Part shown: piece by piece, positions 1,500 through 57,772 of the stretch
Numbering within the stretch: the first letter of the stretch is position 1
Layout: each line of letters opens with the position of its first letter
Virus record (IMG/VR): IMGVR_UViG_3300002143_000235
Coordinates: 124,001 to 188,000 of that record
Length of the DNA stretch: 64,000 bases
Direction: 5' to 3' (one strand)
Translations under genes and position numbers: made by a program
The notes under the pieces: model-generated
Told to the model about the DNA's origin: nothing
What the model saw: only the letters and a program-made list of their open reading frames with translations
The model's database searches: none

Positions 1500-1734
1500 A
1501 ATTGTAACTGTTTGATTTTGATTTGAATTATATTCTTTAGGACTATTATAGTCAGGTGTTTTAGGAAAGTTTAAACCAGTGCTTAAAATTAGTTCATGTT
1601 TCTTACGAGATGGATTTTTTTCAAAGTAATCCATAGCTTTTAGTACATTACTTTAAAAAGTACCTGTTGTAATAAATTTATCATTGATATACAAATCAGA
1701 CCATGGATAATACATTTGAATCTCAATCGTCATA

Positions 1735-2496
1735 TTATCGAATATTTGAGAGTTCAAGACCAATCATGAGCGCCACATTGTCTTCTTTAAATAAAAGAAA
1801 CTGGTCAAACATGTGAATGGTAATGTGATCCGAAGGCGTGATGCTCTTCAGGTACTTATTATTAAAAGTCCAGATTTCATCTTCAACTGTTGGAAGATCT
1901 GCAACATGTACTGACCATCTTGTATCAAAGAATTCAAGTTTACCTTTTTTTACTCGCATCGAGATTGTTTCACTCTTATTAAGAGCAGATAGTTTCTTGA
2001 TATCACTAAATTCATCACCAGTCATAGTAAATGAAAAGTTTGCAAGATCAGGATTCATCTTATTTTCAACATCTTGTTTTGAGATGTCTTTAATTTGACG
2101 GTAGTCACCGGTAACAAAGTTGAATTTCAATTTACCGTCTGTGATATACATCATTCCAGCAATTTTGTCTTTATCCTTGTAAGCTAATCGACCATGAATA
2201 GGCGTTTCTTTTGCAAGATACAATTCTAGATTTTTCACAAAGTTACCACCATTCAAAACAATAAAGTCCATAATGATTGGTTCGTCAGCTGTAATGAATT
2301 CCTCAACAGGATACATAAATGACTTAAACCCGTGAATGAAATTATCTTTTCCTTCACGTGAATAAAATAATACATGTTCTTTATCGATCTTCATTTTAAT
2401 CATTTGATCGATTCTAGTGAGGTCTTTCAATACTGTAATAATCTCTTTTAGATTGGCACGATTGAACTCAAAGTTATAATCTCGTAAATTACTCAT
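1735..2496 (-). CDS. Putative DNA polymerase sliding clamp (PCNA/gp45-like)
   Basis: 253 aa with a two-domain alpha/beta repeat pattern like PCNA (LKEIITVLKDL...; FNNKYLKSI). Confidence 0.6.
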   Translation of the reverse strand: MSNLRDYNFEFNRANLKEIITVLKDLTRIDQMIKMKIDKEHVLFYSREGKDNFIHGFKSFMYPVEEFITADEPIIMDFIVLNGGNFVKNLELYLAKETPIHGRLAYKDKDKIAGMMYITDGKLKFNFVTGDYRQIKDISKQDVENKMNPDLANFSFTMTGDEFSDIKKLSALNKSETISMRVKKGKLEFFDTRWSVHVADLPTVEDEIWTFNNKYLKSITPSDHITIHMFDQFLLFKEDNVALMIGLELSNIR

Positions 2497-2501
2497 ACGA
2501 A

Positions 2502-2768
2502 TTATACTTGTTCCAGATTAATTTGTTTGATAACTGAACGATCTACTTTTAAAATTTTTGATGCAAGACCATGTAAAATAGTATTTGTACTATCAACACA
2601 GTAATCATATAATAATTCAATATGTCTATCGGATAATTCCAATGCTGTATTATCACCAGTCTTATCCATTACAGATTGTGTTAGGATACAGATAACGTTA
2701 AAATCAGTAGATGCTTCCAAAACATCGCGTTCTGGAATAGATAATCTAATTGATGTGAGTGTATTCAT
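2502..2768 (-). CDS. Hypothetical protein
   Basis: ORF co-oriented with and adjacent to the clamp gene. Confidence 0.65.
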   Translation of the reverse strand: MNTLTSIRLSIPERDVLEASTDFNVICILTQSVMDKTGDNTALELSDRHIELLYDYCVDSTNTILHGLASKILKVDRSVIKQINLEQV

Positions 2769-2864
2769 ATGTCTTAAATGTTATTAAAATCTATGTTTTT
2801 AGAACTATTTTTTAAAAAAGTTTAAAAAAATGTGGTAAAAGTTTTTTTATATCAAATACTTTGC

Positions 2865-3350: not shown

Positions 3351-3384
3351 TTAGACTTTGATTTATATTTTTTGTATAAAGTAT

Positions 3385-3867
3385 ATGAATTATAAATTAA
3401 CCATTGAATTAGTACCTGAAACAGCGTGGTATTCAAATGTACGTAGTAATGTTACTCGAACAGAATGGGATAAACTCCGTAAGGAATGCTATAGAAGAGC
3501 TGGACACAAATGTGAAATCTGTTCATCGACCGGACTTGTACAAGGATTCAAATGGCCTGTTGAATGTCATGAAATATGGGATTACAACGATGAGACACAT
3601 ATTCAAAAATTGATTGGTCTTATCTCACTCTGTCCTTTATGTCACAAGGTAAAACATCCAGGTCTTGCTGGTATACGCGGTGAATCGGATCTTGTTATCA
3701 AACAATTAATGCATGTCAATGAAATGTCGAAATATGATGCGACAAGGTATGTATCAAGTGCTTTTCGTATATTTGAACAAAGATCAGAACACAAATGGGA
3801 GTGTGATATCACATACTTAAATAATTATTTACAAGGACCAAATGATTGGATTACTAAAACAGATTGA
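3385..3867 (+). CDS. HNH-family nuclease-like protein
   Basis: CEIC...ECHEIW...LCPLCHKVKH zinc/HNH signature. Confidence 0.75.
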   Translation: MNYKLTIELVPETAWYSNVRSNVTRTEWDKLRKECYRRAGHKCEICSSTGLVQGFKWPVECHEIWDYNDETHIQKLIGLISLCPLCHKVKHPGLAGIRGESDLVIKQLMHVNEMSKYDATRYVSSAFRIFEQRSEHKWECDITYLNNYLQGPNDWITKTD

Positions 3868-9341: not shown

Positions 9342-9367
9342 AAACAAAATTACCAAAATAGTGTATA
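9342..9367 (+). promoter_or_regulatory. AAAC-N18-TATA putative phage middle promoter
   Basis: The same exact spacing recurs at 11 sites. Confidence 0.7.
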
Positions 9368-9373: not shown

Positions 9374-10471
9374 ATGAAGTTATGGTTTCTCTCTGATGCG
9401 CACATTGGTAAGTACAGCGCAGATTCTGATCGCTGGCTAAATCTCATGCGTAATTATTTCTTTGAATTCTTTATTCCTTTGTTGAAGGAGAATGCAAAAC
9501 CAAATGACAAGTTTTTTTTTCTTGGTGATCTTTTTGATAACCGCACATCGATCGATATGCGAGCTCTTACGCTTGCTGTGGAGATCTTTGAAGAACTTGG
9601 TAAGATAATTGAATGTCATGTTCTTTTAGGTAACCACGATCAACGTATGATGAATGATCCAACAATTAATAGTGTTGTTTCAATTCGGAATATTCCAAAT
9701 GTAACCACCTATTCAACGGATTGTGTAATTGATGTTGATGATCATAAAATTCTTATGCTTCCATGGATTCATGGAAAGAATAGTGAGAAAGAAATCATGA
9801 CCAAACACAAGAATTGTGATATTCTTTTGTGCCATTCAGATTTGAATGGTTGTCGAACACAACTATATCCCACTAGACCACTTAATCGTGATATCCTTGA
9901 TATTGATGATTTTGCTGGTTTTGAGCGTGTATACTCTGGACATATTCATATTGTTCAAACAATCAAGAACTTCACCTTTGTTGGAAGCCCGTATCACCTC
10001 GATAGGAATGACGTGGGGAACCGAAAAGGTGTTTGGGTATATGATACTAAGAAGCGTAAAGATGTGTTCATAGAGAACGATTATTCACCTGAATTTATTA
10101 AACACAAGATTCTTCAATCTAATGATATTGTTACTCTTCAGCAATTATTACAAACAAATAATTTTATTGATGTTGAGATCAGTAAGAATTTATTTTTGAA
10201 TGAACCAAATTTACGTTTAGAATTTGATAAACTTAGTAATAAGTTCAGGATTGAGAACATTGATTATATCGATGATATTGAGGTTGAGAAAAACGTTCAG
10301 AAGGAACAATCTTATGTTAAAGGATTGACAATCAAAGAAGCAAGTGAGGCTTGGTGTGATCGTATCAAAATCAATGTTGATACAGAATTATTTACTGAGA
10401 TTGAGTTCAGACACTTGATGAAAGGAACAATTGAAAATTGTTTCAATCTTCTTACTGCGCAAAAGAAATAA
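9374..10471 (+). CDS. Recombination nuclease, gp47/SbcD/Mre11-like metallophosphoesterase
   Basis: SDAHIG, LGDLFD, LGNHD, SGHIH and VGSPY motifs. Confidence 0.9.
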   Translation: MKLWFLSDAHIGKYSADSDRWLNLMRNYFFEFFIPLLKENAKPNDKFFFLGDLFDNRTSIDMRALTLAVEIFEELGKIIECHVLLGNHDQRMMNDPTINSVVSIRNIPNVTTYSTDCVIDVDDHKILMLPWIHGKNSEKEIMTKHKNCDILLCHSDLNGCRTQLYPTRPLNRDILDIDDFAGFERVYSGHIHIVQTIKNFTFVGSPYHLDRNDVGNRKGVWVYDTKKRKDVFIENDYSPEFIKHKILQSNDIVTLQQLLQTNNFIDVEISKNLFLNEPNLRLEFDKLSNKFRIENIDYIDDIEVEKNVQKEQSYVKGLTIKEASEAWCDRIKINVDTELFTEIEFRHLMKGTIENCFNLLTAQKK

Positions 10472-10968: not shown

Positions 10969-12243
10969 ATGGCTGAATACTTTGCATTGTGCATTCCAAT
11001 TTTTCTTGGTCTTATTGCATTTTTTCTATTTAACACAAGAGTTACTATTGGTGAAGTGATTCTTCCGACTGTTGCTTGTATGCTACTGATTTTTACAATG
11101 AAAGGTTGTAGTACATCTTACAATACATCGGATACTGAATACCATACAAACAAAGCTTACAAAGTTGTGTATGAAGAAGATTGGAATGAATACATTGAAA
11201 AAACGTGTACTAAAACAGTTTGTACAGGCTCTGGAAAGGATGAAAAGTGTCATACTGAAACATACGACTGTTCATATGTAGATTATCATCCAGCAACATA
11301 TACACTTATAGATGATGCTGAAAATTCATACAGTATCAGTCCTTTAGAATTTGAAAAAATTTGTAAAAAATGGCATGATAAGCATTGGGTAAATATGTAT
11401 CGTGATTATCATAATAATGATGGTGACAAATATTATGGTGAATGGAACGGTGATATAAAAACACTTATTACAACACACAGTACACATAGTTACGAAAATC
11501 GTGTACAAGCTGCTCGATCTATTTATAACTATGAAGAACTTACAGAAAAGGATGTAAAAGATAATCGTCTTATTGAATATCCTGATCCTAATGGTTATGA
11601 AATGCCAGCGATTCTTTCAAATGATGTGAAATTTCCAAAGTGGAAGCAAGATGAATTAAATCGAATCAATGGTATTTTAGGTGCAAAAAAACAAGTGCAA
11701 GTATTTCTACTTGTATGGAAAAATATGCCGAGTGATGTTGCCGAGATGCAAAAAGCTTACTGGAAAGGTGGAAATAAAAATGAACTTGTTATCTGTGTGG
11801 GTGTTGATAAAAATGAAAACATTGTATGGAATAATGTATTTACATGGTCTGAAAAAGATATTGTAAAAATCAAAATTCGTGATTATTTATTGGATGAACG
11901 TGGAAAGAAATTAAATATTAAAGGTTTAAGTAAATTTACAGAAACAGTTATTGTTAAGGATTGGAAACGTAAACAATTTAAAGATTTTGCATATTTGCAT
12001 ATTGAACTTACACGTGGACAAGTTATTTGGATTTATATCATGACAACAATTGTATCTATTGGACTTACAATTTTTATAGTTGTTAATGGATATAACCCAG
12101 TTTATACTGTATCAAAGTTCAGTACTGATAAGATCAAACAATTCTTCAAAAATCTTGTATATAAGTTGCGTGTATTTTTTATAAACATTTGGACAAAAGT
12201 TGTTAAACTATATTCCAAAATACTAGCACACTTTAAAAAATAA
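10969..12243 (+). CDS. Membrane protein with large extracytoplasmic domain
   Basis: Two N-terminal and one C-terminal TM segments, YWKGGNKNELVICVG, and a host-type promoter at 10936. Confidence 0.75.
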   Translation: MAEYFALCIPIFLGLIAFFLFNTRVTIGEVILPTVACMLLIFTMKGCSTSYNTSDTEYHTNKAYKVVYEEDWNEYIEKTCTKTVCTGSGKDEKCHTETYDCSYVDYHPATYTLIDDAENSYSISPLEFEKICKKWHDKHWVNMYRDYHNNDGDKYYGEWNGDIKTLITTHSTHSYENRVQAARSIYNYEELTEKDVKDNRLIEYPDPNGYEMPAILSNDVKFPKWKQDELNRINGILGAKKQVQVFLLVWKNMPSDVAEMQKAYWKGGNKNELVICVGVDKNENIVWNNVFTWSEKDIVKIKIRDYLLDERGKKLNIKGLSKFTETVIVKDWKRKQFKDFAYLHIELTRGQVIWIYIMTTIVSIGLTIFIVVNGYNPVYTVSKFSTDKIKQFFKNLVYKLRVFFINIWTKVVKLYSKILAHFKK

Positions 12244-12253: not shown

Positions 12254-12712
12254 ATGTTATTAGACGGATTAGAAAAAGCATACAATAGTGCCATAATTAA
12301 AGGATGGGATAAAATTTATATTGCGGTTGATATTCACGATACAATTGTTCATGGAAACTATGTCGCTGATGTATTACCAACAGAGTTTCTGTTTAGAGCA
12401 AAAGAAACGTTAAAGTATCTATCAAAACGTACTGATGTATGTCTTATCTTGTACACATGTTCACACCCACATGAAATTGTTAAATACCAAGAGTTTTTTT
12501 CAAAACATGATATAAATTTTCAGTATGCAAACTGTAATCCAGAAGTTCCAAATAATGCACTAGGTTGCTATACAGATAAACTATATTTTAATCTATTGCT
12601 TGATGACAAAGCCGGATTTATTGAAGACGATTGGTTGATAATATTCAATTTTTTTAAATCAAAACAACTTCTTGTTAAATCTATAGACAAACGAGAAAAT
12701 AAAACTAATTAA
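12254..12712 (+). CDS. HAD-superfamily phosphatase-like protein
   Basis: IAVDIHDTI, LILYTCS and LLLDDKAG. Confidence 0.75.
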   Translation: MLLDGLEKAYNSAIIKGWDKIYIAVDIHDTIVHGNYVADVLPTEFLFRAKETLKYLSKRTDVCLILYTCSHPHEIVKYQEFFSKHDINFQYANCNPEVPNNALGCYTDKLYFNLLLDDKAGFIEDDWLIIFNFFKSKQLLVKSIDKRENKTN

Positions 12713-12714
12713 TA

Positions 12715-13329
12715 ATGAAAATAGCATTTCACAATTTCTTAAATAGACAGTTTGAAAAAACAGCATCAGGTACAAGATTACACAACAAAGACAGAGCGGA
12801 GTATATGACACTTTTTAATAAAGCTGCACAGTTCCCTGGTAATGTATTTACATCAGACAATGATTTCTGCAAGTACGTTATTATTGAAAATCCTTTTGAA
12901 GATATAAAATCTCCAGTCATGCCGCTGACTCTTGATCTATATCCATTTATTCGAACATCTTATTCTGCACGAGTTGAAGGAGAATTACCAGTACTTACAC
13001 GATTTGTACAACTTCCTCCAGGTTTTGATCTTCCAAAGGCTAATTATCTAGTAGGTATTATTTATACTACTGAACATTTAGAAAAAGAACATGAAGCGAA
13101 TTTATATTATGAAGGTGAAAAATTTCGAGATTTTATGGATACGAGTGCTGACTACGGTTTAATTTGTGTATTAGGTACAGTAAATGCTGAAGCCGATCCT
13201 TATGTACCAGTTACAATTATGCGAAATGCGCTTGGAATGTCAGAAGGTGGAAATGGTGTAAAACTAGACCGTGAAATGTACATGAAAAGTGTTGAATTCT
13301 GGTCAAAAAATATTATGGTCGGAAATTAA
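12715..13329 (+). CDS. DUF3228-like protein
   Basis: YSAR...ELPVLTRF and PVTIMRNALG.SEGG.GVKLDRE.Y.KSVEFW. Confidence 0.75.
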   Translation: MKIAFHNFLNRQFEKTASGTRLHNKDRAEYMTLFNKAAQFPGNVFTSDNDFCKYVIIENPFEDIKSPVMPLTLDLYPFIRTSYSARVEGELPVLTRFVQLPPGFDLPKANYLVGIIYTTEHLEKEHEANLYYEGEKFRDFMDTSADYGLICVLGTVNAEADPYVPVTIMRNALGMSEGGNGVKLDREMYMKSVEFWSKNIMVGN

Positions 13330-13504
13330 ATAAATAAGTTTTTTAGAAAAAAGGATCAACATTGTTGATCCTTTTTTTTCATTATATGTAAATAAAAAAA
13401 ACAGTACTATATCTAAAGATAAGTTTATTAATAAAAACATTGAAAGTGCTTATTTTATTAACACTGTGATGATATATAATGTAAATTAATAAGGAAAAAT
13501 ACTC

Positions 13505-14131
13505 ATGACATTTGGATTAGTAGAAATAATGACTGGTATAGGTGGATTTCTTACTATTTACATTATTAATAATGCACGTCTTAAAGAAGGTATTACTGAT
13601 TGGGTTTTAGGTGTATTTGGACGAAATACATACGATATAACTGATCATAATGTTCGTGAACAGCTTAAAGCACTCAAATTTGATTCAATACTTAATGAAT
13701 TTGATAATAAGATTAAGACTGATCTTTATCATTATTATGTTGAAACAGTTTTAAATACTATGCATGATCTTGTAAGTGATATATTAGATAATCAAAAGAA
13801 AATGAATTTTTCGGCACTTAAGGCACATGTTAAAAATAATATGTACGATAGATTATCTAGTATAGATATAGAAATTGATAAACATGTTTCTATGCCTGAT
13901 CAATTACAAGAAAAATTTGACAAGTTTAGAAACTATTTGACAAAACAACATACGTATTCGATTGATAATGCTCTACATGCATCAAATAAAAAGTTACTTC
14001 TTGTTCAAGTTTTAGATGCTATTGAAAATAATAGTCGTTGGTTTCTTTTTTACACTACTGAGATGATGGAAAATTTTAACGGTCACTTTGATGCTTTATC
14101 ACGTAGTGATGTTTTCATTAAACAAAATTAA
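13505..14131 (+). CDS. Hypothetical protein with N-terminal TM segment
   Basis: GATATATAA motif upstream at 13471. Confidence 0.7.
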   Translation: MTFGLVEIMTGIGGFLTIYIINNARLKEGITDWVLGVFGRNTYDITDHNVREQLKALKFDSILNEFDNKIKTDLYHYYVETVLNTMHDLVSDILDNQKKMNFSALKAHVKNNMYDRLSSIDIEIDKHVSMPDQLQEKFDKFRNYLTKQHTYSIDNALHASNKKLLLVQVLDAIENNSRWFLFYTTEMMENFNGHFDALSRSDVFIKQN

Positions 14132-14151
14132 TTCTTTGCGTTATAATACGC

Positions 14152-14655
14152 ATGATACCTACGTACAAAGAAATTAGATTATTAGCAAATAATATTCAGC
14201 AACAAGCACATACACTTGCTACATTACGCGGTGTAAAATTCGCGCGTGCTTTGAGTATAAATATTGCAGTTATAGGACGTATTATTGATTTTCTTGATAA
14301 TCTTAAAAGACCACTACCAGAATATATTGAATACAATAATCAAAGAATAGCAATATGTAAACTATTTTGTAAACGCTCCAATGATGGTGTGTTACAACAT
14401 CTTGTTGTTGAAGGTAAAAATTTATTTGATGTGGATATTGATGATCCAGTATTTATAAAAGAAATGAATGATTTATACTCTAAATACGGTGAAGATATTC
14501 ATCGTCAAAAAAATCAAGATAGTATTTATAATATGGTAGTTAATAATGAAATAGGTCAAGAATGGATTGATCAATTTGTTAAGATAAAAGAGGAATGGAT
14601 TGATGAAAATATTACAGTTCAACAGATGGAACTGATAATGTATTTTATAGAATGA
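14152..14655 (+). CDS. Hypothetical protein
   Basis: AAAC-N18-TATA at 14120-14145. Confidence 0.7.
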   Translation: MIPTYKEIRLLANNIQQQAHTLATLRGVKFARALSINIAVIGRIIDFLDNLKRPLPEYIEYNNQRIAICKLFCKRSNDGVLQHLVVEGKNLFDVDIDDPVFIKEMNDLYSKYGEDIHRQKNQDSIYNMVVNNEIGQEWIDQFVKIKEEWIDENITVQQMELIMYFIE

Positions 14656-14682
14656 AAAAGGGTATCAAATTGATACCCTTTT
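14655..14682. terminator. Bidirectional terminator
   Basis: AAAAAGGGTATCAA-A-TTGATACCCTTTT between convergent genes. Confidence 0.8.
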
Positions 14683-14683
14683 C

Positions 14684-14995
14684 TTATTTTCTGTTTTTGA
14701 ATTGTTCAAATGTTGGAAATTCAAGTGATTCATTCTCTGTTTCATCTTCAAGTGTTGAATCATCTTCACCTTCTGTATCTGTTTCTAATTCATCTTCAGT
14801 CCCAGTTGCATCAGCATTAACATCTTCAGCTGTTTCCATTCCTGGATCTTCAACTTCAGGTTCTGGTGTTCCTTCTAGTGTTTGAGTGTATGTATTGTTA
14901 GCAAGCTCCTTACCAGAAGCGTCCAAAACTTTAACTGACATCTCTGCTTCATTTGTATTGATTTCAATATCAAAACCATTAATTTGAATCTTCAT
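14684..14995 (-). CDS. Acidic hypothetical protein (possible virion internal protein)
   Basis: Start MKIQING. E/D-rich and ends FPTFEQFK. ATATATA motif upstream. Confidence 0.7.
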   Translation of the reverse strand: MKIQINGFDIEINTNEAEMSVKVLDASGKELANNTYTQTLEGTPEPEVEDPGMETAEDVNADATGTEDELETDTEGEDDSTLEDETENESLEFPTFEQFKNRK

Positions 14996-15043
14996 AATAA
15001 GACGTTTATTTTTATATATCAAAATTTTTAGTATATTTGTAAC

Positions 15044-15424
15044 ATGAATAACAAATATTGGTGGACGCCTGAAGAAAAGGGGCTTACACCAGAACAGATT
15101 GATATAAAAGTTGAAGAACTCTGGCAAAAAAGTCTTGCTGAAGTTACACATTGTTGTCCAGATTGTATTGTTAGTCCCGGTGAAGCTCATGAATTTCTGT
15201 GTGACGTTGCAAGATGTATGTCATGTAAAGGACAAGCATTAAGTTGTGGTTGTGAAGATATTGGTGAAGATATTTGGACTGGTTTATGGCCAGGAATTAA
15301 AGAGTGTTACGAATTAAAACTTATTTGTTGGTCTGATCCAAATCGTATTGGTGGAACAGATTGGACTTTTGATTTGAATACACTTGCTGAAATAAATGCT
15401 AGAAAGAAATGGACAAAAGATTAG
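15044..15424 (+). CDS. Cys-rich hypothetical protein
   Basis: CPDC...H...CDVARCMSC.GQ.LSCGC. Host-type promoter at 15032. Confidence 0.7.
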   Translation: MNNKYWWTPEEKGLTPEQIDIKVEELWQKSLAEVTHCCPDCIVSPGEAHEFLCDVARCMSCKGQALSCGCEDIGEDIWTGLWPGIKECYELKLICWSDPNRIGGTDWTFDLNTLAEINARKKWTKD

Positions 15425-15951
15425 AACGAGTATCACGACATATGTCTAAATTACTTAGACATGATAGTGAAGGCCTTGTAATGGATAATGAAGGTTGGAT
15501 ACAGTGTAGTGATTTATGTAAGCATACAAACATTACATTAACAGAACTTCGTGATATTGTATCATCAAATGATAAGAAACGATTTGCATTTGATAAGTAT
15601 GAACAACGAATTCGTGCATCACAAGGTCACTCGAAAGGTATGAATATTGATATTACAATGCCATGTATAACACTAGTTCAACAAGATTTTCCAATATATC
15701 ATGGCACATCTATGTCTATTGCACAGAAAATTATAGGAACATCAATCCTACCAGGTGAACATATTTATGTACACTGAACAAAAAATCTTACTTTGGCATG
15801 GAAACGTGCTAGACAGCGTGATCGCGACAATCCAGCTCTGGTTGTTCTTGATGTAAAAAAATACCTAGCTGACGGAAATGTACTTTATATTTCTGAAAAT
15901 GAAGTGTATCATACAGGAGAAGTAGATGGAAAATATTTACGTATTGAATAA
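15409..15951 (+). pseudogene. kptA: Tpt1/KptA RNA 2'-phosphotransferase interrupted by in-frame TGA (15775-15777)
   Basis: SKLLRHD, DKKRF, IRASQGHS, IYHGT and YVH*. The same frame continues ...VLYISENEVYHTGEVDGKYL to TAA at 15951. Confidence 0.85.
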
Positions 15952-16020
15952 TTTTTTAATAATTTGCACAACCTATTCATTTTTTATCTATATTTGTAAG
16001 GTAAATTAAAAATAAAAAAT

Positions 16021-16758: not shown

Positions 16759-16863
16759 TTATTGATAAAATAAAAAAAACGTTTCAAATTGAAACGTTTT
16801 TTTATTTCGTAATTATTAAACAACTATCATTTTGTGATTTATAATAAAGAAAATAAATTACGT

Positions 16864-17493: not shown

Positions 17494-17570
17494 TGATACT
17501 GAAATTAAACAATCTTTTCAGATCACTATATAAATACTAACAAAGATACTTCTGATAATTATCAGAGGAT

Positions 17571-17580
17571 GTTCATTGAC
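17571..17580 (+). promoter_or_regulatory. boxA-like antitermination element
   Basis: GTTCATTGAC just before the tmRNA. An identical 10-mer lies at 26131 before the tRNA array. Confidence 0.55.
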
Positions 17581-17584
17581 TTCT

Positions 17585-17963: not shown

Positions 17964-17964
17964 C

Positions 17965-17996
17965 AAAAAAGGCTTCAAATTCTTGAAGCCTTTTTT
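17965..17996 (+). terminator. Terminator after tmRNA
   Basis: AAAAAAGGCTTCAA-ATTC-TTGAAGCCTTTTTT. Confidence 0.85.
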
Positions 17997-18036
17997 ATTT
18001 CATAAAATCTCGGTATATTTACTAAAATTGTAAATT

Positions 18037-18744: not shown

Positions 18745-18759
18745 AATAAAAAAGAAGTC

Positions 18760-22788: not shown

Positions 22789-22888
22789 TTTCGGAACTTT
22801 TTTTTAAACAATTTGTATTTATATGTTTATAAGTATTAGACATGCCGGTCTCTAAATGAGCAATATATAAATACATACATTTCTTATT

Positions 22889-24919: not shown

Positions 24920-25014
24920 CATTTTTAATGAATTACAAAGGACCTTCGGGTCTTTTTTTTATTTTAAACAAATTCATAATCTGTGTCTATAAATTGAAAA
25001 GGTCCTGATGATGG

Positions 25015-25670: not shown

Positions 25671-25696
25671 AAACAATTACATATATAGATTGTATA
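25671..25696 (+). promoter_or_regulatory. AAAC-N18-TATA promoter driving leader ORF and tRNA array
   Basis: AAAC at 25671-25674 and TATA at 25693-25696. Confidence 0.7.
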
Positions 25697-26215: not shown

Positions 26216-26301
26216 GGGCCGATGGTGGAATTGGTAGACACGTCGCGTTTAAGCCGCGATGCTCCGTAAGGGGCGTGTGGGTTCGACTCCCACTTGGCCT
26301 A
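26216..26301 (+). tRNA. tRNA-Leu(TAA)
   Basis: Cloverleaf with TCGCG-TT TAA GC-CGCGA and a long variable arm. No encoded CCA. Confidence 0.95.
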
Positions 26302-37554: not shown

Positions 37555-38726
37555 TCGTAATTGTGTAAGTTTTTTTCAGGTTCTTTCTTCTTATATGAAG
37601 TTTTTTTAGAATAGTTTATATAGAGTGTATCTGCGCGTTCTTTACTAAAAAATGGTATGAGTGTTTTCCAATGACATGGTAAAACTTGCATTAGTTTATT
37701 AAGATCTTTCACATTATTGTTAAACCATAATTTGTATTTATGGGGGTCAAAATTTCCTTTAATAATGTGTTGTAAATATTTTTCCCAGAGAAATACTTTA
37801 TAACCTTTTTTCAACCACTCATCAGCTTTACGTTTTCCGACTTCATCATTATCAAAGAAAAAACGAATATCCAAATCATTCTGTGTGAAAATTCCGTAAT
37901 CAGTATTCAGACCTACCGCTCCAACACTATTTGGCATAAATACAGAATCGGTGTATCCTTCAAAAAGTGTTATAGGGGCTTCAAAATCAATATTCAATAC
38001 ATTGTAGAGATAACTAAGTTTGTTGTAGGAAACACTTTCTACAGGATCTAATTCTTCTTCATATACAGCTTCATATAAATCTTTGAATGACCAAACACGG
38101 AATCGTCTATCTATGCCAGTTTTAAGGTTACGTTCCTGCATACCTAATATTTTATCATCTTTTTTATTTAAAAAAACAACATAAGGTTCACTAAATTTAC
38201 CTCTAACTTTTAGTCCTTCATAAAAGTGTGTTTGAATAATATCTTTTGGCATTCCACGATCAAGTAAATATTGATAAACTTTTGAACCGAATCGAACTGG
38301 TGTAAAATTCTTAATCGTTCCGTTTGGTGAGTCCATCCATTCTTTAAGATCTTTCATTTCAATAAGCTTATCAAAATTACTGATAAACCATGCATCGTCT
38401 TTTTCCTGGTAGAAGTGAAACTGAGTATCAATGTAATCAATGATTTTCTTTTTCATTGACGGATCGAGGCGAATACCATAGTTCTTACAGAGACCAGTAA
38501 ACGTCGATCGGCAATCCTCATTATGACATTTGTAGTAAAGACTACTCAAGTAAAGATCACCACGTTTCTTAGACATGTCCTTTGCACTGTCTCCACAGAT
38601 TGGACAAGCAAAAGAAATTTTCTCAGCTTTTTTTGTATTAATGACACGCTTCTTTGGATGCGTATGTGCTTGATCCAGAATGACCTGAATATTGCTTATG
38701 ATAAATTCTCTGTCAATTACACTCAT
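37530..38726 (-). CDS. DNA primase (T4 gp61-like)
   Basis: CPICGDS...YKCHNEDC zinc finger and TOPRIM LFEGYTDS, FFFDND..G, KDLN. Start MSVIDRE follows AAAC-N18-TATA (38758-38733). Confidence 0.9.
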   Translation of the reverse strand: MSVIDREFIISNIQVILDQAHTHPKKRVINTKKAEKISFACPICGDSAKDMSKKRGDLYLSSLYYKCHNEDCRSTFTGLCKNYGIRLDPSMKKKIIDYIDTQFHFYQEKDDAWFISNFDKLIEMKDLKEWMDSPNGTIKNFTPVRFGSKVYQYLLDRGMPKDIIQTHFYEGLKVRGKFSEPYVVFLNKKDDKILGMQERNLKTGIDRRFRVWSFKDLYEAVYEEELDPVESVSYNKLSYLYNVLNIDFEAPITLFEGYTDSVFMPNSVGAVGLNTDYGIFTQNDLDIRFFFDNDEVGKRKADEWLKKGYKVFLWEKYLQHIIKGNFDPHKYKLWFNNNVKDLNKLMQVLPCHWKTLIPFFSKERADTLYINYSKKTSYKKKEPEKNLHNYEWTLDIRR

Positions 38727-38890
38727 ACTCTTTATACATTTCAAGAAAAAAATTGTTTAGTGACGGGAACCTTTTCACAAATACTTGTTTATTATAGTAG
38801 AGCTTAACAATAACTGATATAAGAGACCGGGTTTAATATATAATCTTGTATCAGCATTAAAGGCAATTTAAAAAAGGATTTAAAAAATTT

Positions 38891-39547
38891 ATGGAATTTA
38901 CAACAACATCTACGGCTTCCGTTACAGCAAACTACACAATTGTTTCGGAAAAAACAAATTACGAACAACGATTCGAAGAAGTTACCGGTGAAAACTTCAA
39001 TCGTTTTTACGCTAAATACTATCCTAAACTTGTGTGGCATATTCAAAAGATGAATATCAACACAATAGATGCAGAAGATTTAGCGAACAGAGCATTTATG
39101 AATGCTTTAACAAAAATAGACATGTATGATCCCAATTATCATTTTAGTACATGGTTATTTACAGCTGGAAAAAATCTAGCTTACAAATTCAAGACTGATA
39201 GCTCAAAGATCTTTCTTATCGATACAAATGGTGGTTCACACGAAACGAATGATCATGCTTATAGCACATTACAGTATCATTTAGTATCACAACACGACAC
39301 ATCAAATCTTGATTACGATAATATTACAAAACTCAAGTATGAAGCAACACTTGAAGAAATTCAACGTTTAAGTCCAATTTACAAAACCATTGTTACAATG
39401 CGTGATGTTGAAGGATATACTTACGCTGAAATTTGTGAACAATTAGGTATACAACTTCACACAGTGAAGAATCGTTTACACCACGGACGAACAACTATCG
39501 AAAATAAATTAAAAGAAAAGTTCTCTTATATTTACGAGAATTATTAA
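38891..39547 (+). CDS. ECF-type sigma-70 factor
   Basis: Region 2 DAEDLANRAF...FSTWLF..KN and region 4 EGYTYAEICEQLGIQLHTVKNRLHHGR. Confidence 0.88.
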   Translation: MEFTTTSTASVTANYTIVSEKTNYEQRFEEVTGENFNRFYAKYYPKLVWHIQKMNINTIDAEDLANRAFMNALTKIDMYDPNYHFSTWLFTAGKNLAYKFKTDSSKIFLIDTNGGSHETNDHAYSTLQYHLVSQHDTSNLDYDNITKLKYEATLEEIQRLSPIYKTIVTMRDVEGYTYAEICEQLGIQLHTVKNRLHHGRTTIENKLKEKFSYIYENY

Positions 39548-50143: not shown

Positions 50144-50273
50144 TTATGTTACCACATTTTCAGGAGGTAATACATCAGCTGCTTTTGTAAACATACATCT
50201 TGTTTTAGTGTATCAAAAGTACACATTATTTTCCAAATATCAAACATTTGCTTGATTTAGTTGTATATCTGGC

Positions 50274-50672
50274 ATGATCGAATACAATATCAAACCTCGA
50301 AATAATGAATACGGCGGAATTCTGGCTGATTTATTTGCATCAATTGATACATTTCAATATGACAGTAATATTGTTTATGATCGATACCACTATTATGATC
50401 GATACCACTATGAGCCTAATAATATTATCACTATCAAGTTTAAAACTGATGATGTGTTTGAAGCATATTTTATGAGTTTACTTGGAGAGGATGGCTTTAT
50501 AAGACAAGACATTGGATTTGATCTTACTGTTACGCGTTTTAATAAATTTGGAATTGCACTCATTCGCATTACATTTATAAATGCACAATTAAGCGATATG
50601 AGTTTTGATTGTGACGAGAATGTGATGAATTTTTGTTGCAACAATATACAAACCGAATACCTTGACATCTAG
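50274..50672 (+). CDS. Hypothetical protein (weak tail-tube-like pattern)
   Basis: AAAC-N18-TATA at 50242-50267. In-frame 18-bp tandem duplication at 50376-50411. Confidence 0.6.
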   Translation: MIEYNIKPRNNEYGGILADLFASIDTFQYDSNIVYDRYHYYDRYHYEPNNIITIKFKTDDVFEAYFMSLLGEDGFIRQDIGFDLTVTRFNKFGIALIRITFINAQLSDMSFDCDENVMNFCCNNIQTEYLDI

Positions 50673-54332: not shown

Positions 54333-55901
54333 ATGGCAGATATTAATCCATCTTACAGGGCTCTCGTTGATGGGAACCAAGACGTTTTCAGATACGGTTT
54401 AGCAACACTAGATCAATCTATATACGAAGATCCAACTTACATTGGTTTCACTATTGAGTTAGATGAGACATCAGCTCTTTTTAATGACGTTTTACCATTT
54501 TTAGAAAAGCATGCTTCTACACGAGCAGAAATGAAAGCCCGTATTCCTGTCTATAATGAATTTATTCGTAGAGTAAAACAAGTATTTAATTCACAAGAAA
54601 GTATTGTCTCACCAAATGATAAAACTGAATTTATTAAACAACATTATATTAATTCTGTTTCAGGTTTAGAGACACTTACAAAAAAAATGATTTTATGGCG
54701 TGAAGATAAGCTTAGTTTTGTAATGCATGAAGATATTGGTCTCTATTCGTCATATCTAGCATATCTATATAATAATTTAGTATACAGTTATGAAAATGGT
54801 CGTGTCATTATTCCAGAGAATTTAGTAAAGTTTAATTGCTACATTAAAATGTCAGAAGTTCGATCATTAACATCAGTTAAAAATTTAATATCAAACAATG
54901 CATCAGAACGGGCTATAGCAAATGCACTTAAAAATAGTGTTACATCAATTATTTACAAATTGTATGACTGTGAATATGATTTTTTTAATTCAAAACCATT
55001 TGAGAATGAAATTTCACAATCTGGAATTGATACACCGCAACCTATACATTCACTAATTTCTTTTGATATGTATTTTAAAAGTGTGAGTCGACAAATTTAT
55101 ACACCACTCATAAATGATTCTGTATCAATGAATGATGATAGAACAGATCTTGATATTATAGTTAATATTACGCCTTCTAATACAAGTATGGATGGTATAC
55201 CTAAAGATCCATCTAAAACTGATATAACAACCGATGGAAATGCACCACAAACTGGAAGTGTTCAATCCGTTTCAGCATTTAAGCAAGAATCATTCATGAA
55301 TGAATCATCTAAAAAACCATCATCTTCAGCAACTTCATCTTTTGAAAAGAAAGGATTGAACGAAGATGATATTCGTGGTCGCGATAAAGCTTTGAATGAA
55401 ATTACATCATACAATGATGAATTTGTTGCTGATAGAAAAGAACAAGAGCAAGCTGCAATTTTACGTGCGGCAGGTCAAGTTGCTGATCAAGATGGTACAG
55501 ATTTGACACTTGAAAATGCTGGAGGAGATGGAGCGCTTCAACAATTATTAAATGATCCACAAGCAGCACTTACGGCTTATGGTGATAAATTAAAAGGTGT
55601 TGGAAAAAATGCACTTCTATCACAACTTAAAGCAGCACGTAAATTAATAGTGAACAGACGAAATGAACTTATTCGTGCTTTTGTATCTGAAGCTGTTCAA
55701 AAAACAGGAATTAAAAAAATTGTGCCAGATAATGTATACAAAGATCAAAATTTCCTTCAAGAAACACTTGATCAAATAGCTGGTTCTGTTGGTAACACTG
55801 TAGCAAATGAAGTTGTAAGCGAACTTACCAACAATAATACCATTCCAGGACTTGATGGTGGTATTGGTAACACATTGAATAATTTTATTCAAGGATTATA
55901 A
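54333..55901 (+). CDS. Putative tail/baseplate structural protein
   Basis: YEDPTYIGF and YINSVSGL, located in the baseplate block. Confidence 0.5.
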   Translation: MADINPSYRALVDGNQDVFRYGLATLDQSIYEDPTYIGFTIELDETSALFNDVLPFLEKHASTRAEMKARIPVYNEFIRRVKQVFNSQESIVSPNDKTEFIKQHYINSVSGLETLTKKMILWREDKLSFVMHEDIGLYSSYLAYLYNNLVYSYENGRVIIPENLVKFNCYIKMSEVRSLTSVKNLISNNASERAIANALKNSVTSIIYKLYDCEYDFFNSKPFENEISQSGIDTPQPIHSLISFDMYFKSVSRQIYTPLINDSVSMNDDRTDLDIIVNITPSNTSMDGIPKDPSKTDITTDGNAPQTGSVQSVSAFKQESFMNESSKKPSSSATSSFEKKGLNEDDIRGRDKALNEITSYNDEFVADRKEQEQAAILRAAGQVADQDGTDLTLENAGGDGALQQLLNDPQAALTAYGDKLKGVGKNALLSQLKAARKLIVNRRNELIRAFVSEAVQKTGIKKIVPDNVYKDQNFLQETLDQIAGSVGNTVANEVVSELTNNNTIPGLDGGIGNTLNNFIQGL

Positions 55902-55916
55902 AACATTGAATCATAT

Positions 55917-57734
55917 ATGAATGACTACGAATTAAAACTCAAAAACCATGAGTTTATTGGAATTGTCGAGGACACAAATGATCCAGACAAAAAACAACGT
56001 GTACGTATACGTATACCATATTTACATGGTACAAAAAAAGAAATACCAACTGATGCACTTCCATGGGCACATCCAAAGCGTAGTAATAATGGTTTTTCAT
56101 TTTCTATACCAGAAGTCAACAAAATTGTGATGGTCACATTTCCAAGTGGTAATGCATATTTTCCTGTTTATAATGATGCTGTTCATTTAAATATCAATCT
56201 TCAGAAGAAAATTGAATCATATAACGGTGATGATTATGCGTCATTTATGGCTATATGTTACAACTACAATACACAAATTTTTGTTGATAATGAAGCACTA
56301 AACATGTATTATAAGTTAAACGGTATTAAAGTAACAAATGATACAGTATTACTTGATTTAAAAGATAATGAATCAATGATAAAATTGGGTGATATATCTG
56401 CCTCACAAGAAGCTGTACTCGGTACTAATTTTTTCAAATGGATGGATGAACTTGTTAAAGTATTAAGTAATGCATACATTGGTAATAGTGGAGTTGCTGT
56501 AATTCCAAATCCAGATCTTATACGTGTATTATCAAATTATGGTACACAACGTAAAGATTTCATTTCTAAACATATATCACTTGTAGAAAATAGAGGTGTA
56601 ACTGTTGAACAAACTGATATTGATGCAACTATTGGTGATAAGTATGAATTAGTTGCTGAATCAGGCGTACTTGATGTGAAACAAGCAGATTTGACAACCA
56701 TTGATACGCAAACACGACAATTAGATTTTGAACCAACACCACCAAATATAAATAAAAAAGCTGTTGAAACAGCTGATTTTGAACCATTGTTATCCGGTGA
56801 TCAATCAGCATCTGGAGAATTTTATGAAGTAAAAACTCCAACAGATATTAATGATCAAAATGCTGTTGATGAGGTAAATGATATTTATGGATCAGAAGAA
56901 CCGGTAAAAGTATTTGATAATGGTTCTTCTGATATTTATTTTGGAGAGGGCGATGACGTATTGTTTGATGATACTTATCTAACAGAAGCCGCAGCAGCAA
57001 ATCCAATAAATTATGGTAGTGGCTCTATTGGTGGTTCTAATCCGACAATTCTTTCACCAGTTGTTTTTGATCCACCACTTCCAAATCCAGCAACTGGAAA
57101 TCAGAAGAATGATGTTAACCGAATGAAAAAATATTTTAAATCAAAAAGTTATCAATATTCTAATTTACCGTTTCATATGAATATTGTAGGTATTCGTAAT
57201 ACACAAAAAGAAAGTGGACAAATTACAAATCAATTTGATGATTACATGTGGGTATTTTGTAATGATGATAAAGGTGGATTAGAATTTTATAAATTTGCAA
57301 TAACTACAACACCAGGTTTTGAACCCGGTACAAATCATTTACCATCTGATCCAGTTGGAATGGTTACATATGGTCAATATCCAACTTATCGTTTACATTT
57401 TCACAATCAAGATACATACGGTACAAGTAGACCATGTTTAGGACAATCTGAAAATTCATACATTAGACATGCGGCTAATGCTAATAGATATTATACACCA
57501 AGTGAATATGTTGGTACTGAAAAATATGGTGGTCGTGGATTTAATATTCATAATTCTACAATGTCAGGAAGTGCAACAAGTGTGAACAACTGGTCAAAAG
57601 GTTGTCAAGTTTTTAAAAATGCTGATGATTGGCGTAAATTTATGTCTTTGTGTTATAGACAGAGAGATAAAGCAAAAATTGATAATTATACCTATACACT
57701 TATTTCACAAAAAGAATTTTCAAAATTCAAATAA
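55917..57734 (+). CDS. Baseplate spike (gp5-like OB-fold) with C-terminal His/Cys peptidase-like domain
   Basis: GIVEDTNDP....RVRIRIPYLHG...LPWA (gp5 OB-fold). C-terminus NIVGIRN..N.FDD, TT.PG and GFNIH...NWSKGCQV. Confidence 0.8.
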   Translation: MNDYELKLKNHEFIGIVEDTNDPDKKQRVRIRIPYLHGTKKEIPTDALPWAHPKRSNNGFSFSIPEVNKIVMVTFPSGNAYFPVYNDAVHLNINLQKKIESYNGDDYASFMAICYNYNTQIFVDNEALNMYYKLNGIKVTNDTVLLDLKDNESMIKLGDISASQEAVLGTNFFKWMDELVKVLSNAYIGNSGVAVIPNPDLIRVLSNYGTQRKDFISKHISLVENRGVTVEQTDIDATIGDKYELVAESGVLDVKQADLTTIDTQTRQLDFEPTPPNINKKAVETADFEPLLSGDQSASGEFYEVKTPTDINDQNAVDEVNDIYGSEEPVKVFDNGSSDIYFGEGDDVLFDDTYLTEAAAANPINYGSGSIGGSNPTILSPVVFDPPLPNPATGNQKNDVNRMKKYFKSKSYQYSNLPFHMNIVGIRNTQKESGQITNQFDDYMWVFCNDDKGGLEFYKFAITTTPGFEPGTNHLPSDPVGMVTYGQYPTYRLHFHNQDTYGTSRPCLGQSENSYIRHAANANRYYTPSEYVGTEKYGGRGFNIHNSTMSGSATSVNNWSKGCQVFKNADDWRKFMSLCYRQRDKAKIDNYTYTLISQKEFSKFK

Positions 57735-57772
57735 ATATTTAAACAATAATATACAATTTAACTATACAATGT

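What the first reader, a model, noticed from the sequence alone, without database searches (positions are those of the whole stretch)
1547..57766. Phage promoter class AAAC-N18-TATA with invariant spacing, plausibly read by the encoded ECF sigma
AAAC followed by exactly 18 nt and TATA occurs upstream of genes at 9342 (gp47-like), 14120, 16818 (clpP), 17507 (tmRNA), 22806, 24966, 25671 (leader/tRNAs), 50242 and 57741 (guaC operon). On the minus strand it occurs at 38758 (primase) and 1572. Variants are AGAC-N18-TATA at 3353 and AAAC-N18-TAAA at 2823 (clamp operon). Targets are mostly replication and translation-support genes, consistent with a middle regulon. ECF sigmas typically recognise an AAC-containing -35 element (established), and one is encoded at 38891. 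The link between them is inference.
Basis: partly seen in the sequence, partly recalled or inferred. Interest (0 to 1): 0.7.

Follow-up and report, generated by a model that had tools for sequence, protein, structure and literature searches.

The report
Phage middle promoters with leaderless genes
A giant phage of a Bacteroidota-type host carries about 40-50 copies of a fixed-spacing promoter (AAACA, 17 bases, TATAA) in front of its DNA-replication genes, often placed so that the transcript would start at the AUG itself. The phage's own ECF sigma factor is the most likely reader, but this has not been shown.

Summary
AAAC-N18-TATA occurs 21 times in the window against 7.8 expected. In the whole 313.7 kb phage record only N18 is enriched. 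The refined consensus is yAAACAwTT-N13-GTATAA-N5-A. A promoter-only matrix finds 40 strong sites against 1.3 in shuffles.

In 19 sites an ATG that opens a long ORF sits exactly 7 nt after TATA, so these mRNAs are predicted to be leaderless.

Targets are thymidylate synthase, SSB, DNA polymerase, clamp, clamp loader, primase, SbcD, kinases, DHFR, tmRNA, the tRNA array and a gp55-like late sigma. That is a middle regulon.

Two other classes exist. One is the host Bacteroidota type (TTTG/TAnnTTTG). The other is a late octamer, ATATATAA, before head and packaging genes.

The motif, its spacing and the leaderless layout are conserved before primase and before the gp55-like gene in distant relatives.

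The ECF assignment is favoured for four reasons:
- The architecture is ECF-like.
- Near-complete relatives without any other two-domain sigma keep the class.
- Relatives' ECF genes carry the motif.
- No phage RNA polymerase or MotA/AsiA was found.

It remains unproven. This genome also encodes an early RpoS-like sigma, and its ECF gene sits behind the late octamer.

The parts
2503..2528 (-). Class-2 promoter of the sliding-clamp-like gene (1735-2496). ATG at 2496 is the predicted +1, so the mRNA would be leaderless.
   Evidence: Exact match, 19.1 bits. The gene hits PHROG DNA polymerase processivity factor only weakly (E=4.4e-4).
2798..2823 (-). Class-2 variant (AAAC-N18-TAAA) before the 88-aa ORF 2502-2768, upstream of the clamp gene.
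   Evidence: 17.5 bits. Matrix hit with predicted +1 at 2791.
3353..3378 (+). Class-2 variant (AGAC-N18-TATA). ATG at 3385 is the predicted +1 of an HNH endonuclease gene (3385-3867).
   Evidence: 17.2 bits. PHROG HNH endonuclease, E=1.4e-54.
9342..9367 (+). Class-2 promoter. Leaderless SbcD/gp47-like nuclease gene 9374-10471.
   Evidence: PHROG SbcD-like, aligned from residue 1.
12136..12161 (+). Class-2 promoter inside the 3' end of ORF 10969-12243, 86 nt before the phosphoheptose-isomerase-like gene 12254-12712.
   Evidence: 20.1 bits. PHROG hit.
14120..14145 (+). Class-2 promoter. Leaderless ORF 14152-14655 (167 aa, unknown function).
16818..16843 (+). Class-2 promoter, predicted +1 at 16850. 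ClpP-like protease gene starting at ATG 16864.
   Evidence: 17.0 bits. PHROG head maturation/ClpP-type protease.
17507..17532 (+). Class-2 promoter, predicted +1 at 17539. The tmRNA gene 17585-17966 lies downstream.
   Evidence: 19.1 bits. Rfam tmRNA 87 bits.
22806..22831 (+). Class-2 promoter before ORF 22889-23653. A late-type octamer lies between them at 22863.
   Evidence: 19.9 bits..
24966..24991 (+). Class-2 promoter before ORF 25015-25653.
   Evidence: 18.4 bits.
25671..25696 (+). Class-2 promoter upstream of the array of nine tRNA genes (26216-29716).
   Evidence: 18.9 bits. tRNAs.
37592..37617 (-). Class-2 promoter inside the 3' end of the primase gene, before ORF 37042-37554.
   Evidence: 15.5 bits.
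38733..38758 (-). Class-2 promoter of the primase gene. The true start is probably ATG 38726 (the predicted +1), not TTG 38744.
   Evidence: 21.3 bits. PHROG DNA primase. AAAC-N18-TATA-N6-ATG stands before the primase orthologue in the window and in seven relatives (L022-L026, L028, L029). In L022-L025 the independent gene calls start at the predicted +1.
50242..50267 (+). Class-2 promoter. Leaderless ORF 50274-50672.
   Evidence: 20.1 bits.
57741..57766 (+). Class-2 promoter. Leaderless 69-aa ORF 57773-57982, followed by the GuaC-like dehydrogenase gene 57979-58923.
   Evidence: 16.7 bits. PHROG dehydrogenase, E=1.6e-83.
1547..1572 (-). It is marginal and lies inside the longest ORF call 1194-1634.
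   Evidence: 12.0 bits, no purine or ATG at the predicted +1.
38891..39547 (+). ECF-type sigma factor gene (218 aa), the candidate reader of class 2.
   Evidence: Pfam Sigma70_r2, Sigma70_r4_2 and Sigma70_ECF. TIGR02937 73 bits against a cut-off of 42.9, best partial match SigW. 70 homologues at 38-57% identity on contigs up to 452 kb.
38836..38843 (+). Late-type octamer ATATATAA, 47 nt before the ECF gene.
   Evidence: An octamer stands at the same place in relatives L022-L025 and in 37 of 55 relatives.
38766..38792 (+). Distal ECF-like element GGAAC-N16-GTTTAT upstream of the ECF gene. It may be the autoregulatory promoter of this subclade.
   Evidence: It is one of only two intergenic copies in the genome. 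It is conserved as (T)G(G/A)AAC(T)-N16-GTTTAT in 7 close relatives, about 105-128 nt before the start codon.

Best explanation
The motif is the middle (delayed-early) promoter class of a jumbo phage of at least 314 kb that infects a Bacteroidota-type host and has no RNA polymerase of its own.

Consensus, numbered from the predicted start: y AAACA w TT at -33 to -25, then 13 unspecified bases, then G TATAA at -11 to -6, then a pyrimidine at -1 and A at +1.

Proposed reader: host core RNA polymerase carrying the phage ECF sigma (38891-39547). Sigma-4 would bind the AAAC/T-tract box and sigma-2 the GTATAA box.

Transcription is predicted to start at the A that lies 7 nt after TATA. In 19 of 50 sites this A is the A of the start codon, so the mRNA has no leader.

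The regulon covers nucleotide synthesis, the replisome, tmRNA, tRNAs and the gene for a gp55-like late sigma. That late sigma would then read the late octamer ATATATAA before head and packaging genes. The proposed relay is host sigma-A (TAnnTTTG promoters), then ECF (this class), then the gp55-like factor.

Shown: the motif, its spacing, its enrichment, its gene targets and its conservation. Inferred: the start site, the timing and which sigma reads it.
For: (1) Statistics.

(2) Start-site signature. Position +1 is A in 82% and G in 16% of sites, and -1 is a pyrimidine in 72%. ATG lies 6 nt after TATA in 19 sites against at most 2 at any other offset. These ATGs open ORFs of 63-1359 aa. Family profiles align from residue 1 for thymidylate synthase, SbcD and dNMP kinase.

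(3) Targets are replication and nucleotide genes plus the gp55-like gene.

(4) The class is distinct from the host-type class TTTG/TAnnTTTG, which is abundant here (consensus from PMC6847099), and from the late octamer before terminase, prohead protease and major head genes.

(5) Conservation:
- AAAC-N18-TATA-N6-ATG stands before primase in the window and in seven relatives whose sigma is 38-53% identical. One of them has 49% GC.
- AAAC-N17/18-TATAA stands before the gp55-like gene in 5 of 5 genomes.
- The N18 excess holds over 61 related loci: 259 against about 173.

(6) ECF link:
- An AAC -35 box with a proximal T-tract, a GT-containing -10 box and a 14-17 bp spacer are the published ECF hallmarks. 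SigW promoters read tGAAACnTTTt / CGTA (PMC5758882, PMC8103513). The phage sigma's best curated match is SigW, though only partially.
- Relatives G002, G003, G004 and G005 (91-98% complete) have no homologue of the 323-aa sigma. In G002, G004 and G005 the ECF is the only sigma-like hit with both a sigma-2 and a sigma-4 match. G003 has a second 238-aa candidate with weak hits to both domains. Yet G005 and G002 keep the class. In G005, AAAC-N17-TATA-N6-ATG occurs 11 times against 1 and 3 at N18 and N19.
- 33 of 56 ECF genes of relatives have AAAC-N17/18-TATA within 200 nt upstream, against about 1.6 expected. This is the autoregulation hallmark.
- No RNA polymerase beta-like or T7-like gene and no MotA/AsiA was found.
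Against: There are no transcript 5' ends. Public RNA runs gave only short contigs.

In this phage the ECF gene has no exact class-2 or host-type promoter. It has the late-type octamer, and that octamer is conserved in close relatives. Taken alone this would make ECF a late gene and leave the relay without a trigger.

This genome also has a 323-aa RpoS/RpoD-like sigma in an operon behind a host-type promoter, which is the expected place for a middle sigma.

The -10 box GTATAA differs from the ECF norm CGT. It shares TATA at -10 to -7 with the late octamer.

The sigma-upstream regions of relatives are TATA-rich, so several spacings score there: N16 13, N17 12, N18 20, N20 10. This weakens the autoregulation count.

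Absence of other sigmas in relatives rests on 91-98% complete records and on profile searches.
Confidence: 0.6

Rival explanations
1. The class is real but is read by the 323-aa RpoS/RpoD-like phage sigma (G000 72901-73872, minus strand). That sigma is made early from a host-type promoter, like gp28 of SPO1. The ECF sigma would then have another, late or host-directed, regulon.
For: The gene lies in an operon with a NUDIX gene behind TATATTTG at G000 74312. It has sigma-2 and sigma-4 regions. The ECF gene of this phage sits behind the late octamer. TATAA resembles a sigma-70-type -10 box.
Against: No homologue was found in G002, G003, G004 or G005, while G002 and G005 keep the promoter class and G003-G005 keep it before the gp55-like gene. 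An AAAC/T-tract -35 box is typical of ECF sigmas, not of group 1-3 sigmas (PMC5758882). With TATAA read in the host sigma-A register (T-12, A-11; PMC6847099), the start would fall inside the ATG.
Confidence: 0.15
2. A sigma that needs only the TATA box (host sigma-A or the gp55-like factor) is recruited by an unidentified phage activator that binds AAACA near -30, as MotA does at T4 middle promoters.
For: The box is centred near -30, like the MotA box (own knowledge). Class 2 and the late octamer share TATA at -10 to -7. Many phage ORFs have no annotation.
Against: No MotA or AsiA homologue was found. Two sub-threshold MotCF hits are unrelated to each other. The strictly fixed spacing, the T-tract and the G at -11 fit direct two-domain sigma contact. 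The gp55-like gene is itself a conserved target.
Confidence: 0.12
3. The promoters are read by a divergent phage-encoded RNA polymerase that profile searches missed.
For: Jumbo phages often encode very divergent polymerases (own knowledge). The record is only about 80% complete.
Against: No Rpb2-type or T7-type match was found in G000 or in four relatives that are 91-100% complete. Three sigma-like genes imply use of host core enzyme.
Confidence: 0.04
4. The pattern is a compositional or translational feature of an AT-rich genome, not a promoter.
For: The genome has 32% GC, is rich in TATA, and has A-rich regions before start codons.
Against: The peak is specific to one spacing, controls are flat, shuffles give 1.3 against 40, and the motif is conserved in a 49% GC relative. 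A box 25-32 nt upstream of a start codon has no known role in translation.
Confidence: 0.02

Closest known systems
ECF (group 4) sigma promoters, especially Bacillus subtilis SigW (tGAAACnTTTt ... CGTA)
   Same: AAC-containing -35 box followed by a T-tract. GT(A) in the -10 box. Short fixed spacer within the published 14-17 bp range. High adherence to consensus. Sigma with only domains 2 and 4. (PMC5758882, PMC8103513.)
   Different: The base before AAAC is T or C, never G. The -10 box is GTATAA rather than CGTA/CGTC. No anti-sigma gene lies next to the sigma gene. The sigma is encoded by a phage. The regulon is DNA replication, not envelope stress. The promoter is placed for leaderless mRNAs.
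phiEco32 / 7-11 phage-encoded sigma and its middle/late promoters
   Same: A phage-encoded sigma redirects host core polymerase to a phage-specific promoter class after an early phase run by host sigma (PMC4331800). That the phiEco32 sigma is ECF-like is from my own knowledge.
   Different: There is no detectable sequence similarity: phiEco32-type phages are absent from the tblastn hits. Those promoters are described as one extended -10-like element (PMC4331800), not a two-box promoter. The host phylum differs. No leaderless layout is reported there.
T4 middle (MotA/AsiA) and late (gp55, TATAAATA) promoters
   Same: Same logic of targets: replication genes and the late sigma gene are middle, structural genes are late. 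The box lies near -30. The late octamer ATATATAA resembles TATAAATA, and a gp55-like protein is present (T4 facts from own knowledge).
   Different: No MotA or AsiA was found. The middle class is most likely read by a dedicated sigma rather than by a remodelled host sigma.
SPO1 sigma cascade (gp28, then gp33/34)
   Same: Stepwise replacement of host sigma by phage sigmas for middle and late genes (PMC13401047 abstract).
   Different: Different sigma families, different promoters and a different host phylum.
Leaderless mRNAs of Actinobacteria, Deinococcus and archaea
   Same: The -10 box sits at a fixed short distance before the start codon, so that +1 is the A of AUG (PMC3160421; own knowledge).
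   Different: Here the layout belongs to phage-specific promoter classes in a phylum where most mRNAs are leadered. In F. johnsoniae 87% of leaders exceed 10 nt and the mean is 33 nt (PMC6847099).

Membership tests
ECF (group 4) sigma factor (the protein at 38891-39547) | [quoted passage not shown] | tested here: met
   Sigma70_r2 at residues 39-104 and Sigma70_r4_2 at 152-201, no region 3, 218 aa. TIGR02937 73 bits against a cut-off of 42.9.
ECF (group 4) sigma factor (the protein at 38891-39547) | Co-transcribed cognate anti-sigma factor | tested here: not met
   The downstream gene 39605-41098 has its own octamer promoter after a terminator-like hairpin. It is not conserved in relatives, where the neighbour is 580 aa, 628 aa, a SET-domain protein or 174 aa. 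This feature is no longer required by the current ECF definition (PMC8103513).
ECF (group 4) sigma factor (the protein at 38891-39547) | Positive autoregulation: its own promoter type stands upstream of its gene | tested here: inconclusive
   Window: no exact class-2 site, only GGAAC-N16-GTTTAT and the late octamer. Relatives: AAAC-N17/18-TATA within 200 nt upstream in 33 of 56, but in TATA-rich context where several spacings score.
ECF-type promoter (the AAAC-N18-TATA class) | AAC in the -35 box, often followed by a T-tract | tested here: met
   A, A (96%), A, C at the four AAAC positions (three of them invariant), then A/T, A/T, T, T. Definition from PMC5758882 and PMC8103513.
ECF-type promoter (the AAAC-N18-TATA class) | CGT-type -10 box | tested here: inconclusive
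   The -10 box is (G 48%) T A T A A. GT is shared with CGT, and GTA with the SigW CGTA, but the C is not conserved.
ECF-type promoter (the AAAC-N18-TATA class) | Transcription depends on the ECF holoenzyme | not testable with these tools
   Needs in vitro transcription or a reporter assay.
T4-type middle promoter (MotA/AsiA sigma appropriation) | MotA and AsiA homologues encoded by the phage | tested here: not met
   PF09010: no match. PF09158: only 13-17 bit hits below the cut-off, in two ORFs unrelated to each other.
Bacteroidota sigma-A promoter (TTTG / TAnnTTTG) | TAnnTTTG -7 element 4-5 nt before the start | tested here: not met
   Class-2 sites have TATAA and no TTTG. The host-type element forms a separate abundant class in the same genome (PMC6847099).
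Leaderless mRNA | The 5' end of the transcript lies at, or within a few nt of, the start codon | not testable with these tools
   Predicted from ATG exactly 7 nt after TATA in 19 class-2 sites. Public RNA contigs were uninformative.

The most novel reading that the evidence does not exclude
A large family of freshwater and gut jumbo phages of Bacteroidota runs a conserved relay of host sigma-A, then a phage ECF sigma, then a gp55-like sigma. In it both phage-specific promoter classes put TATA at -10 to -7, so that dozens of transcripts begin at the AUG. This would be programmed leaderless expression of replication and structural genes, in a phylum that lacks Shine-Dalgarno pairing and whose own mRNAs are mostly leadered. 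The ECF sigma would be autoregulated and also fed back from the late class.
Probability: 0.4. Interest if true: 0.72.

Novelty: new variant of a known kind. Interest (0 to 1): 0.6.

Why it matters
Almost nothing is known about how giant phages of Bacteroidota, including the Lak and other 'huge' phages that carry relatives of this sigma, time their gene expression.

Here three promoter classes can be read directly from sequence and assigned to gene sets. That gives temporal annotation for hundreds of unknown ORFs in this phage and in dozens of related metagenomic genomes.

The work also yields a compact, orthogonal sigma/promoter pair for genetic tools in Bacteroidota. It predicts widespread leaderless translation in a phylum without Shine-Dalgarno initiation, which can be tested with a simple reporter.

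Tried and rejected
- DNA search of the phage collection with a 3 kb gene: no match.
- Single-protein scans of IMG/VR with the two sigmas found only a 100% identical contig. An alignment was needed.
- RNA evidence. The runs that hold the phage are DNA. RNA runs found with the capsid gene gave only Logan contigs. On window 13001-18900 only two tmRNA pieces of a relative were laid, with nothing at a start site. On the major head gene, one 99% identical contig ends 1 nt after the late octamer, but another reads through it. This is inconclusive and does not bear on class 2.
- GAAAC/GGAAC-N16-18-TTTAT as a fourth genome-wide class: rejected. There is no spacing peak, and the only intergenic copies are the one before the sigma gene and one on a non-coding strand.
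- MotA-like activator: the two weak MotCF hits are chance.
- Phage RNA polymerase: none found.
- Counting AAAC-N18-TATA before relatives' sigma genes as clean proof of autoregulation: toned down, because TATATA repeats there make several spacings score.
- No complex or structure prediction was run. A DNA partner gets no verdict, and a fold would not tell specificity.

Full report
**Context**

The window is bases 124001-188000 of a 313,708-base IMG/VR virus record estimated to be 80% complete. It has 32% GC. It carries nine tRNA genes and a tmRNA gene.

Start codons are not preceded by Shine-Dalgarno sequences. G is depleted and A enriched upstream, and GGAG occurs before 1% of genes. That is the pattern described for Bacteroidetes (PMC6847099).

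The closest sigma relatives in named phages are Prevotella Lak megaphages, other huge uncultured phages and crAss-like phages. The DNA occurs in freshwater and riverine metagenomes.

Yes.

- AAAC-N18-TATA occurs 21 times in the window against 7.8 +/- 3.05 in dinucleotide shuffles. None of 100 shuffles reached 21.
- In the whole record a scan of spacings 12-24 peaks only at 18: 65 against about 32. For AAACAA-N16-TATA the figures are 26 against about 5. Control words give flat profiles.
- Iterative matrix refinement from the intergenic matches converged on 50 sites. The consensus is y-AAAC-A-w-T-T, 13 weakly specified bases, (G)-TATA-A, three free bases, g, y, A.
- With the matrix cut to the promoter positions only, real against block-shuffled counts are 40 against 1.3 at 16 bits or more and 63 against 12 at 12 bits or more. 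Of the 63 sites, 37 lie in the 9.6% of the genome that is intergenic.
Twelve of thirteen score 15.5-21.3 bits, and 1547-1572(-) is marginal at 12.0 bits.
- Three good sites were missed: 2503-2528(-), 12136-12161(+) and 37592-37617(-).
- Seven exact matches lie inside genes. Six of them score between -2.1 and 10.3 bits and one (59034) scores 14.0. They account for the chance background.

The base 7 nt after TATA is A in 82% and G in 16% of sites. The base before it is a pyrimidine in 72%. This is the usual signature of a transcription start.

In 19 of the 50 sites this A is the A of an ATG that opens an ORF of 63 to 1359 codons. Among promoter-only hits, ATG lies 6 nt after TATA 19 times, and at most twice at any other offset from 0 to 14.

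Family profiles align from residue 1 of these ORFs for thymidylate synthase, SbcD and dNMP kinase. In four relatives the database's independent gene calls for primase begin exactly at the predicted +1.

These genes are therefore predicted to give leaderless mRNAs. The start site itself is inferred, not measured.

**What the promoters drive**

Downstream genes, by PHROG and Pfam hits:

- Nucleotide metabolism: thymidylate synthase, thymidylate kinase, a phosphohydrolase, dNMP kinase, dihydrofolate reductase, a GuaC-like dehydrogenase.
- Replication and repair: gp32-like SSB, both halves of a split DNA polymerase, clamp loader, a clamp-like protein (weak hit), SbcD/gp47, primase, an HNH endonuclease.
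- Other: a ClpP-like protease, the tmRNA, the tRNA array.
- A 132-aa protein matching the PHROG 'late sigma transcription factor' (gp55-like).

This is the content of a classical middle (delayed-early) regulon.

**Two other promoter classes in the same genome**

Class 1 is the Bacteroidota housekeeping type. TAnnTTTG, mostly TATATTTG, occurs in 94 intergenic copies, usually with TTG(C) about 21 nt upstream. It stands before 55 genes. The consensus TTTG/TANNTTTG, with the start 4-5 nt after the element, is published (PMC6847099). This fixes the host phylum and identifies the early genes.

Class 3 is the octamer ATATATAA. It has 78 copies, 65% of them intergenic, and no conserved upstream box. 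Thirteen copies have ATG exactly 3 nt after the octamer, which again puts TATA 6 nt before the ATG. It precedes the terminase large subunit, prohead protease, major head protein and most very large ORFs. It resembles the T4 late promoter TATAAATA (own knowledge), and the genome encodes a gp55-like protein. Class 3 is therefore most likely the late class.

**Conservation**

The ECF sigma has 70 homologues at 38-57% identity on contigs of up to 452 kb.

In four of these (L022-L025) the local gene order is kept: primase and sigma are divergent. The primase promoter reads AAAC, 18 bases, TATA, 6 bases, ATG in the window and in all four, although the spacer sequence differs. One of these relatives has 49% GC. 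Three further IMG/VR relatives (L026, L028, L029) show the same layout.

Across 61 related IMG/VR loci, N18 gives 259 matches against 148-197 for the other spacings.

The gp55-like gene is preceded by a terminator hairpin and AAAC-N17/18-TATAA in G000, G001, G003, G004 and G005. The step from class 2 to the late sigma gene is thus a conserved part of the circuit.

**Which factor reads the class?**

The genome encodes three sigma-like proteins:

- the ECF sigma in the window;
- a 323-aa RpoS/RpoD-like sigma at G000 72901-73872(-);
- the gp55-like protein.

No RNA polymerase gene and no MotA/AsiA homologue was found.

Evidence for the ECF:

- Published hallmarks of ECF promoters are an AAC -35 box, a proximal T-tract, a CGT-type -10 box, close adherence to consensus and a spacer of 14-17 bp. 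SigW promoters read tGAAACnTTTt / CGTA (PMC5758882, PMC8103513). Class 2 has AAAC-A-w-TT and GTA at a fixed distance. I recall the SigW consensus as TGAAAC-N16-CGTA, which would be the same register as AAAC-N16-nGTA here. That spacing is from memory.
- Relatives G002, G003, G004 and G005 (91-98% complete) lack any homologue of the 323-aa sigma. In G002, G004 and G005 the ECF is the only sigma-like hit with both a sigma-2 and a sigma-4 match. G003 also has a 238-aa candidate with weak hits to both domains.
- G005 and G002 still have the class. In G005, AAAC-N17-TATA-N6-ATG occurs 11 times against 1 and 3 at N18 and N19. In G002, AAAC-N18-TATAA occurs 31 times against about 14. The sites stand before methyltransferase, exonuclease and hydrolase genes.
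- In 33 of 56 non-redundant relatives the ECF gene itself has AAAC-N17/18-TATA within 200 nt upstream, against about 1.6 expected. In 20 of 56 it also has a host-type TAHHTTTG, against about 8 expected. That would fit an early, self-amplifying sigma.

Evidence against:

- In the window phage and its closest relatives the ECF gene has neither element. It has the late octamer 47 nt upstream, and a distal GGAAC-N16-GTTTAT element that occurs at only two intergenic places in the genome.
- The 323-aa sigma lies in an early operon, which is where a middle sigma would be expected.
- The regions before relatives' sigma genes are TATA-rich, so neighbouring spacings also score.

I put the ECF reading at about 0.6, the 323-aa sigma at 0.15, an unknown activator at 0.12, and the remainder on a hidden polymerase or an artefact.

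**Comparison with known systems**

The thing works like an ECF-type two-box promoter class used as a phage middle class. This is the logic of phiEco32 or SPO1 (PMC4331800, PMC13401047) and, in target content, of T4 middle promoters.

- It is not a T4-type MotA system: the defining proteins were tested for and not found.
- It is not the host sigma-A class.
- The sigma is a member of the ECF family by domain content and by the curated superfamily model.
- It lacks a neighbouring anti-sigma gene.
- Autoregulation is unclear in this genome.

New here:

- the phylum and the phage family;
- the exact consensus;
- the conserved three-class layout;
- the systematic leaderless placement, in a phylum whose own mRNAs are mostly leadered (PMC6847099).

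**Verdict**

The promoter-class and middle-regulon readings are supported. The ECF assignment is favoured but unproven. I rate it a new variant of a known kind, with interest 0.6.

Noticed in passing
window 5824, 8500, 10936, 15989, 59774, 61574, 61603 and many sites elsewhere in G000: Host-type Bacteroidota promoters (TTTG about 21 nt before TATATTTG) are abundant. At least 15 carry a nearly identical leader, GTATTGTTCAATTAATAA, before the start codon. This suggests a shared 5' UTR element of the early genes.
   Followed up: partly
window 9142, 13472, 20248, 21575, 23721, 36379, 38836, 39594, 43266(-), 43382, 50693, 54322; 78 copies in G000: The octamer ATATATAA is a third, late-type promoter class before terminase, prohead protease, major head and large structural ORFs. 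Thirteen copies have ATG 3 nt after it, so those genes would also be leaderless.
   Followed up: partly
G000 72901-73872(-) (L003:859-1830): A 323-aa RpoS/RpoD-like sigma gene lies in an early operon with a NUDIX gene behind a host-type promoter. Of five large relatives, only G001 has a homologue. Its promoter specificity is unknown.
   Followed up: partly
G000 about 101274-101672(-) (L004:1378-1776): A 132-aa gp55-like late sigma gene. Its promoter combines AAAC-N18-TATA with a perfect ATATATAA octamer. A class-2 promoter after a terminator hairpin precedes the orthologue in five of five genomes.
   Followed up: yes
L025 (292 kb NCBI metagenome contig): This relative's sigma gene translates to the database protein only with TAG read as glutamine, so part of this phage family appears to use a recoded stop codon.
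   Followed up: no
L024 (452 kb NCBI contig): This relative has 49% GC in the sampled 20 kb, yet keeps AT-rich AAACA...ATATAA promoters with a leaderless ATG before primase and another gene.
   Followed up: partly
G000 88978 and 241472 (L010:10202-11686, L015:14172-15569): The DNA polymerase appears to be split into two genes about 150 kb apart, each behind its own class-2 promoter.
   Followed up: no
window 41095-41610: A 171-aa protein with an ADP-ribosyltransferase domain of the polyvalent-protein type (PF18760, E=1.8e-13) lies two genes after the sigma gene. It could modify host proteins.
   Followed up: no
G000 28232(-)/28305(+): Two class-2 promoters stand back to back. Both are leaderless. 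They drive a 1359-aa ORF and a thymidylate kinase gene in opposite directions.
   Followed up: no
window 17585-17966: Phage-encoded tmRNA. Two 151-nt contigs from a freshwater metatranscriptome, 95-99% identical, cover it. A tmRNA of this phage or a near relative is therefore present in an RNA library.
   Followed up: partly
L010:15942 (G000 94742), major head gene: One 99% identical RNA-library contig ends 1 nt after the late octamer of the major head gene, while a contig from another run reads through it. This hints at a start there but is not evidence.
   Followed up: partly
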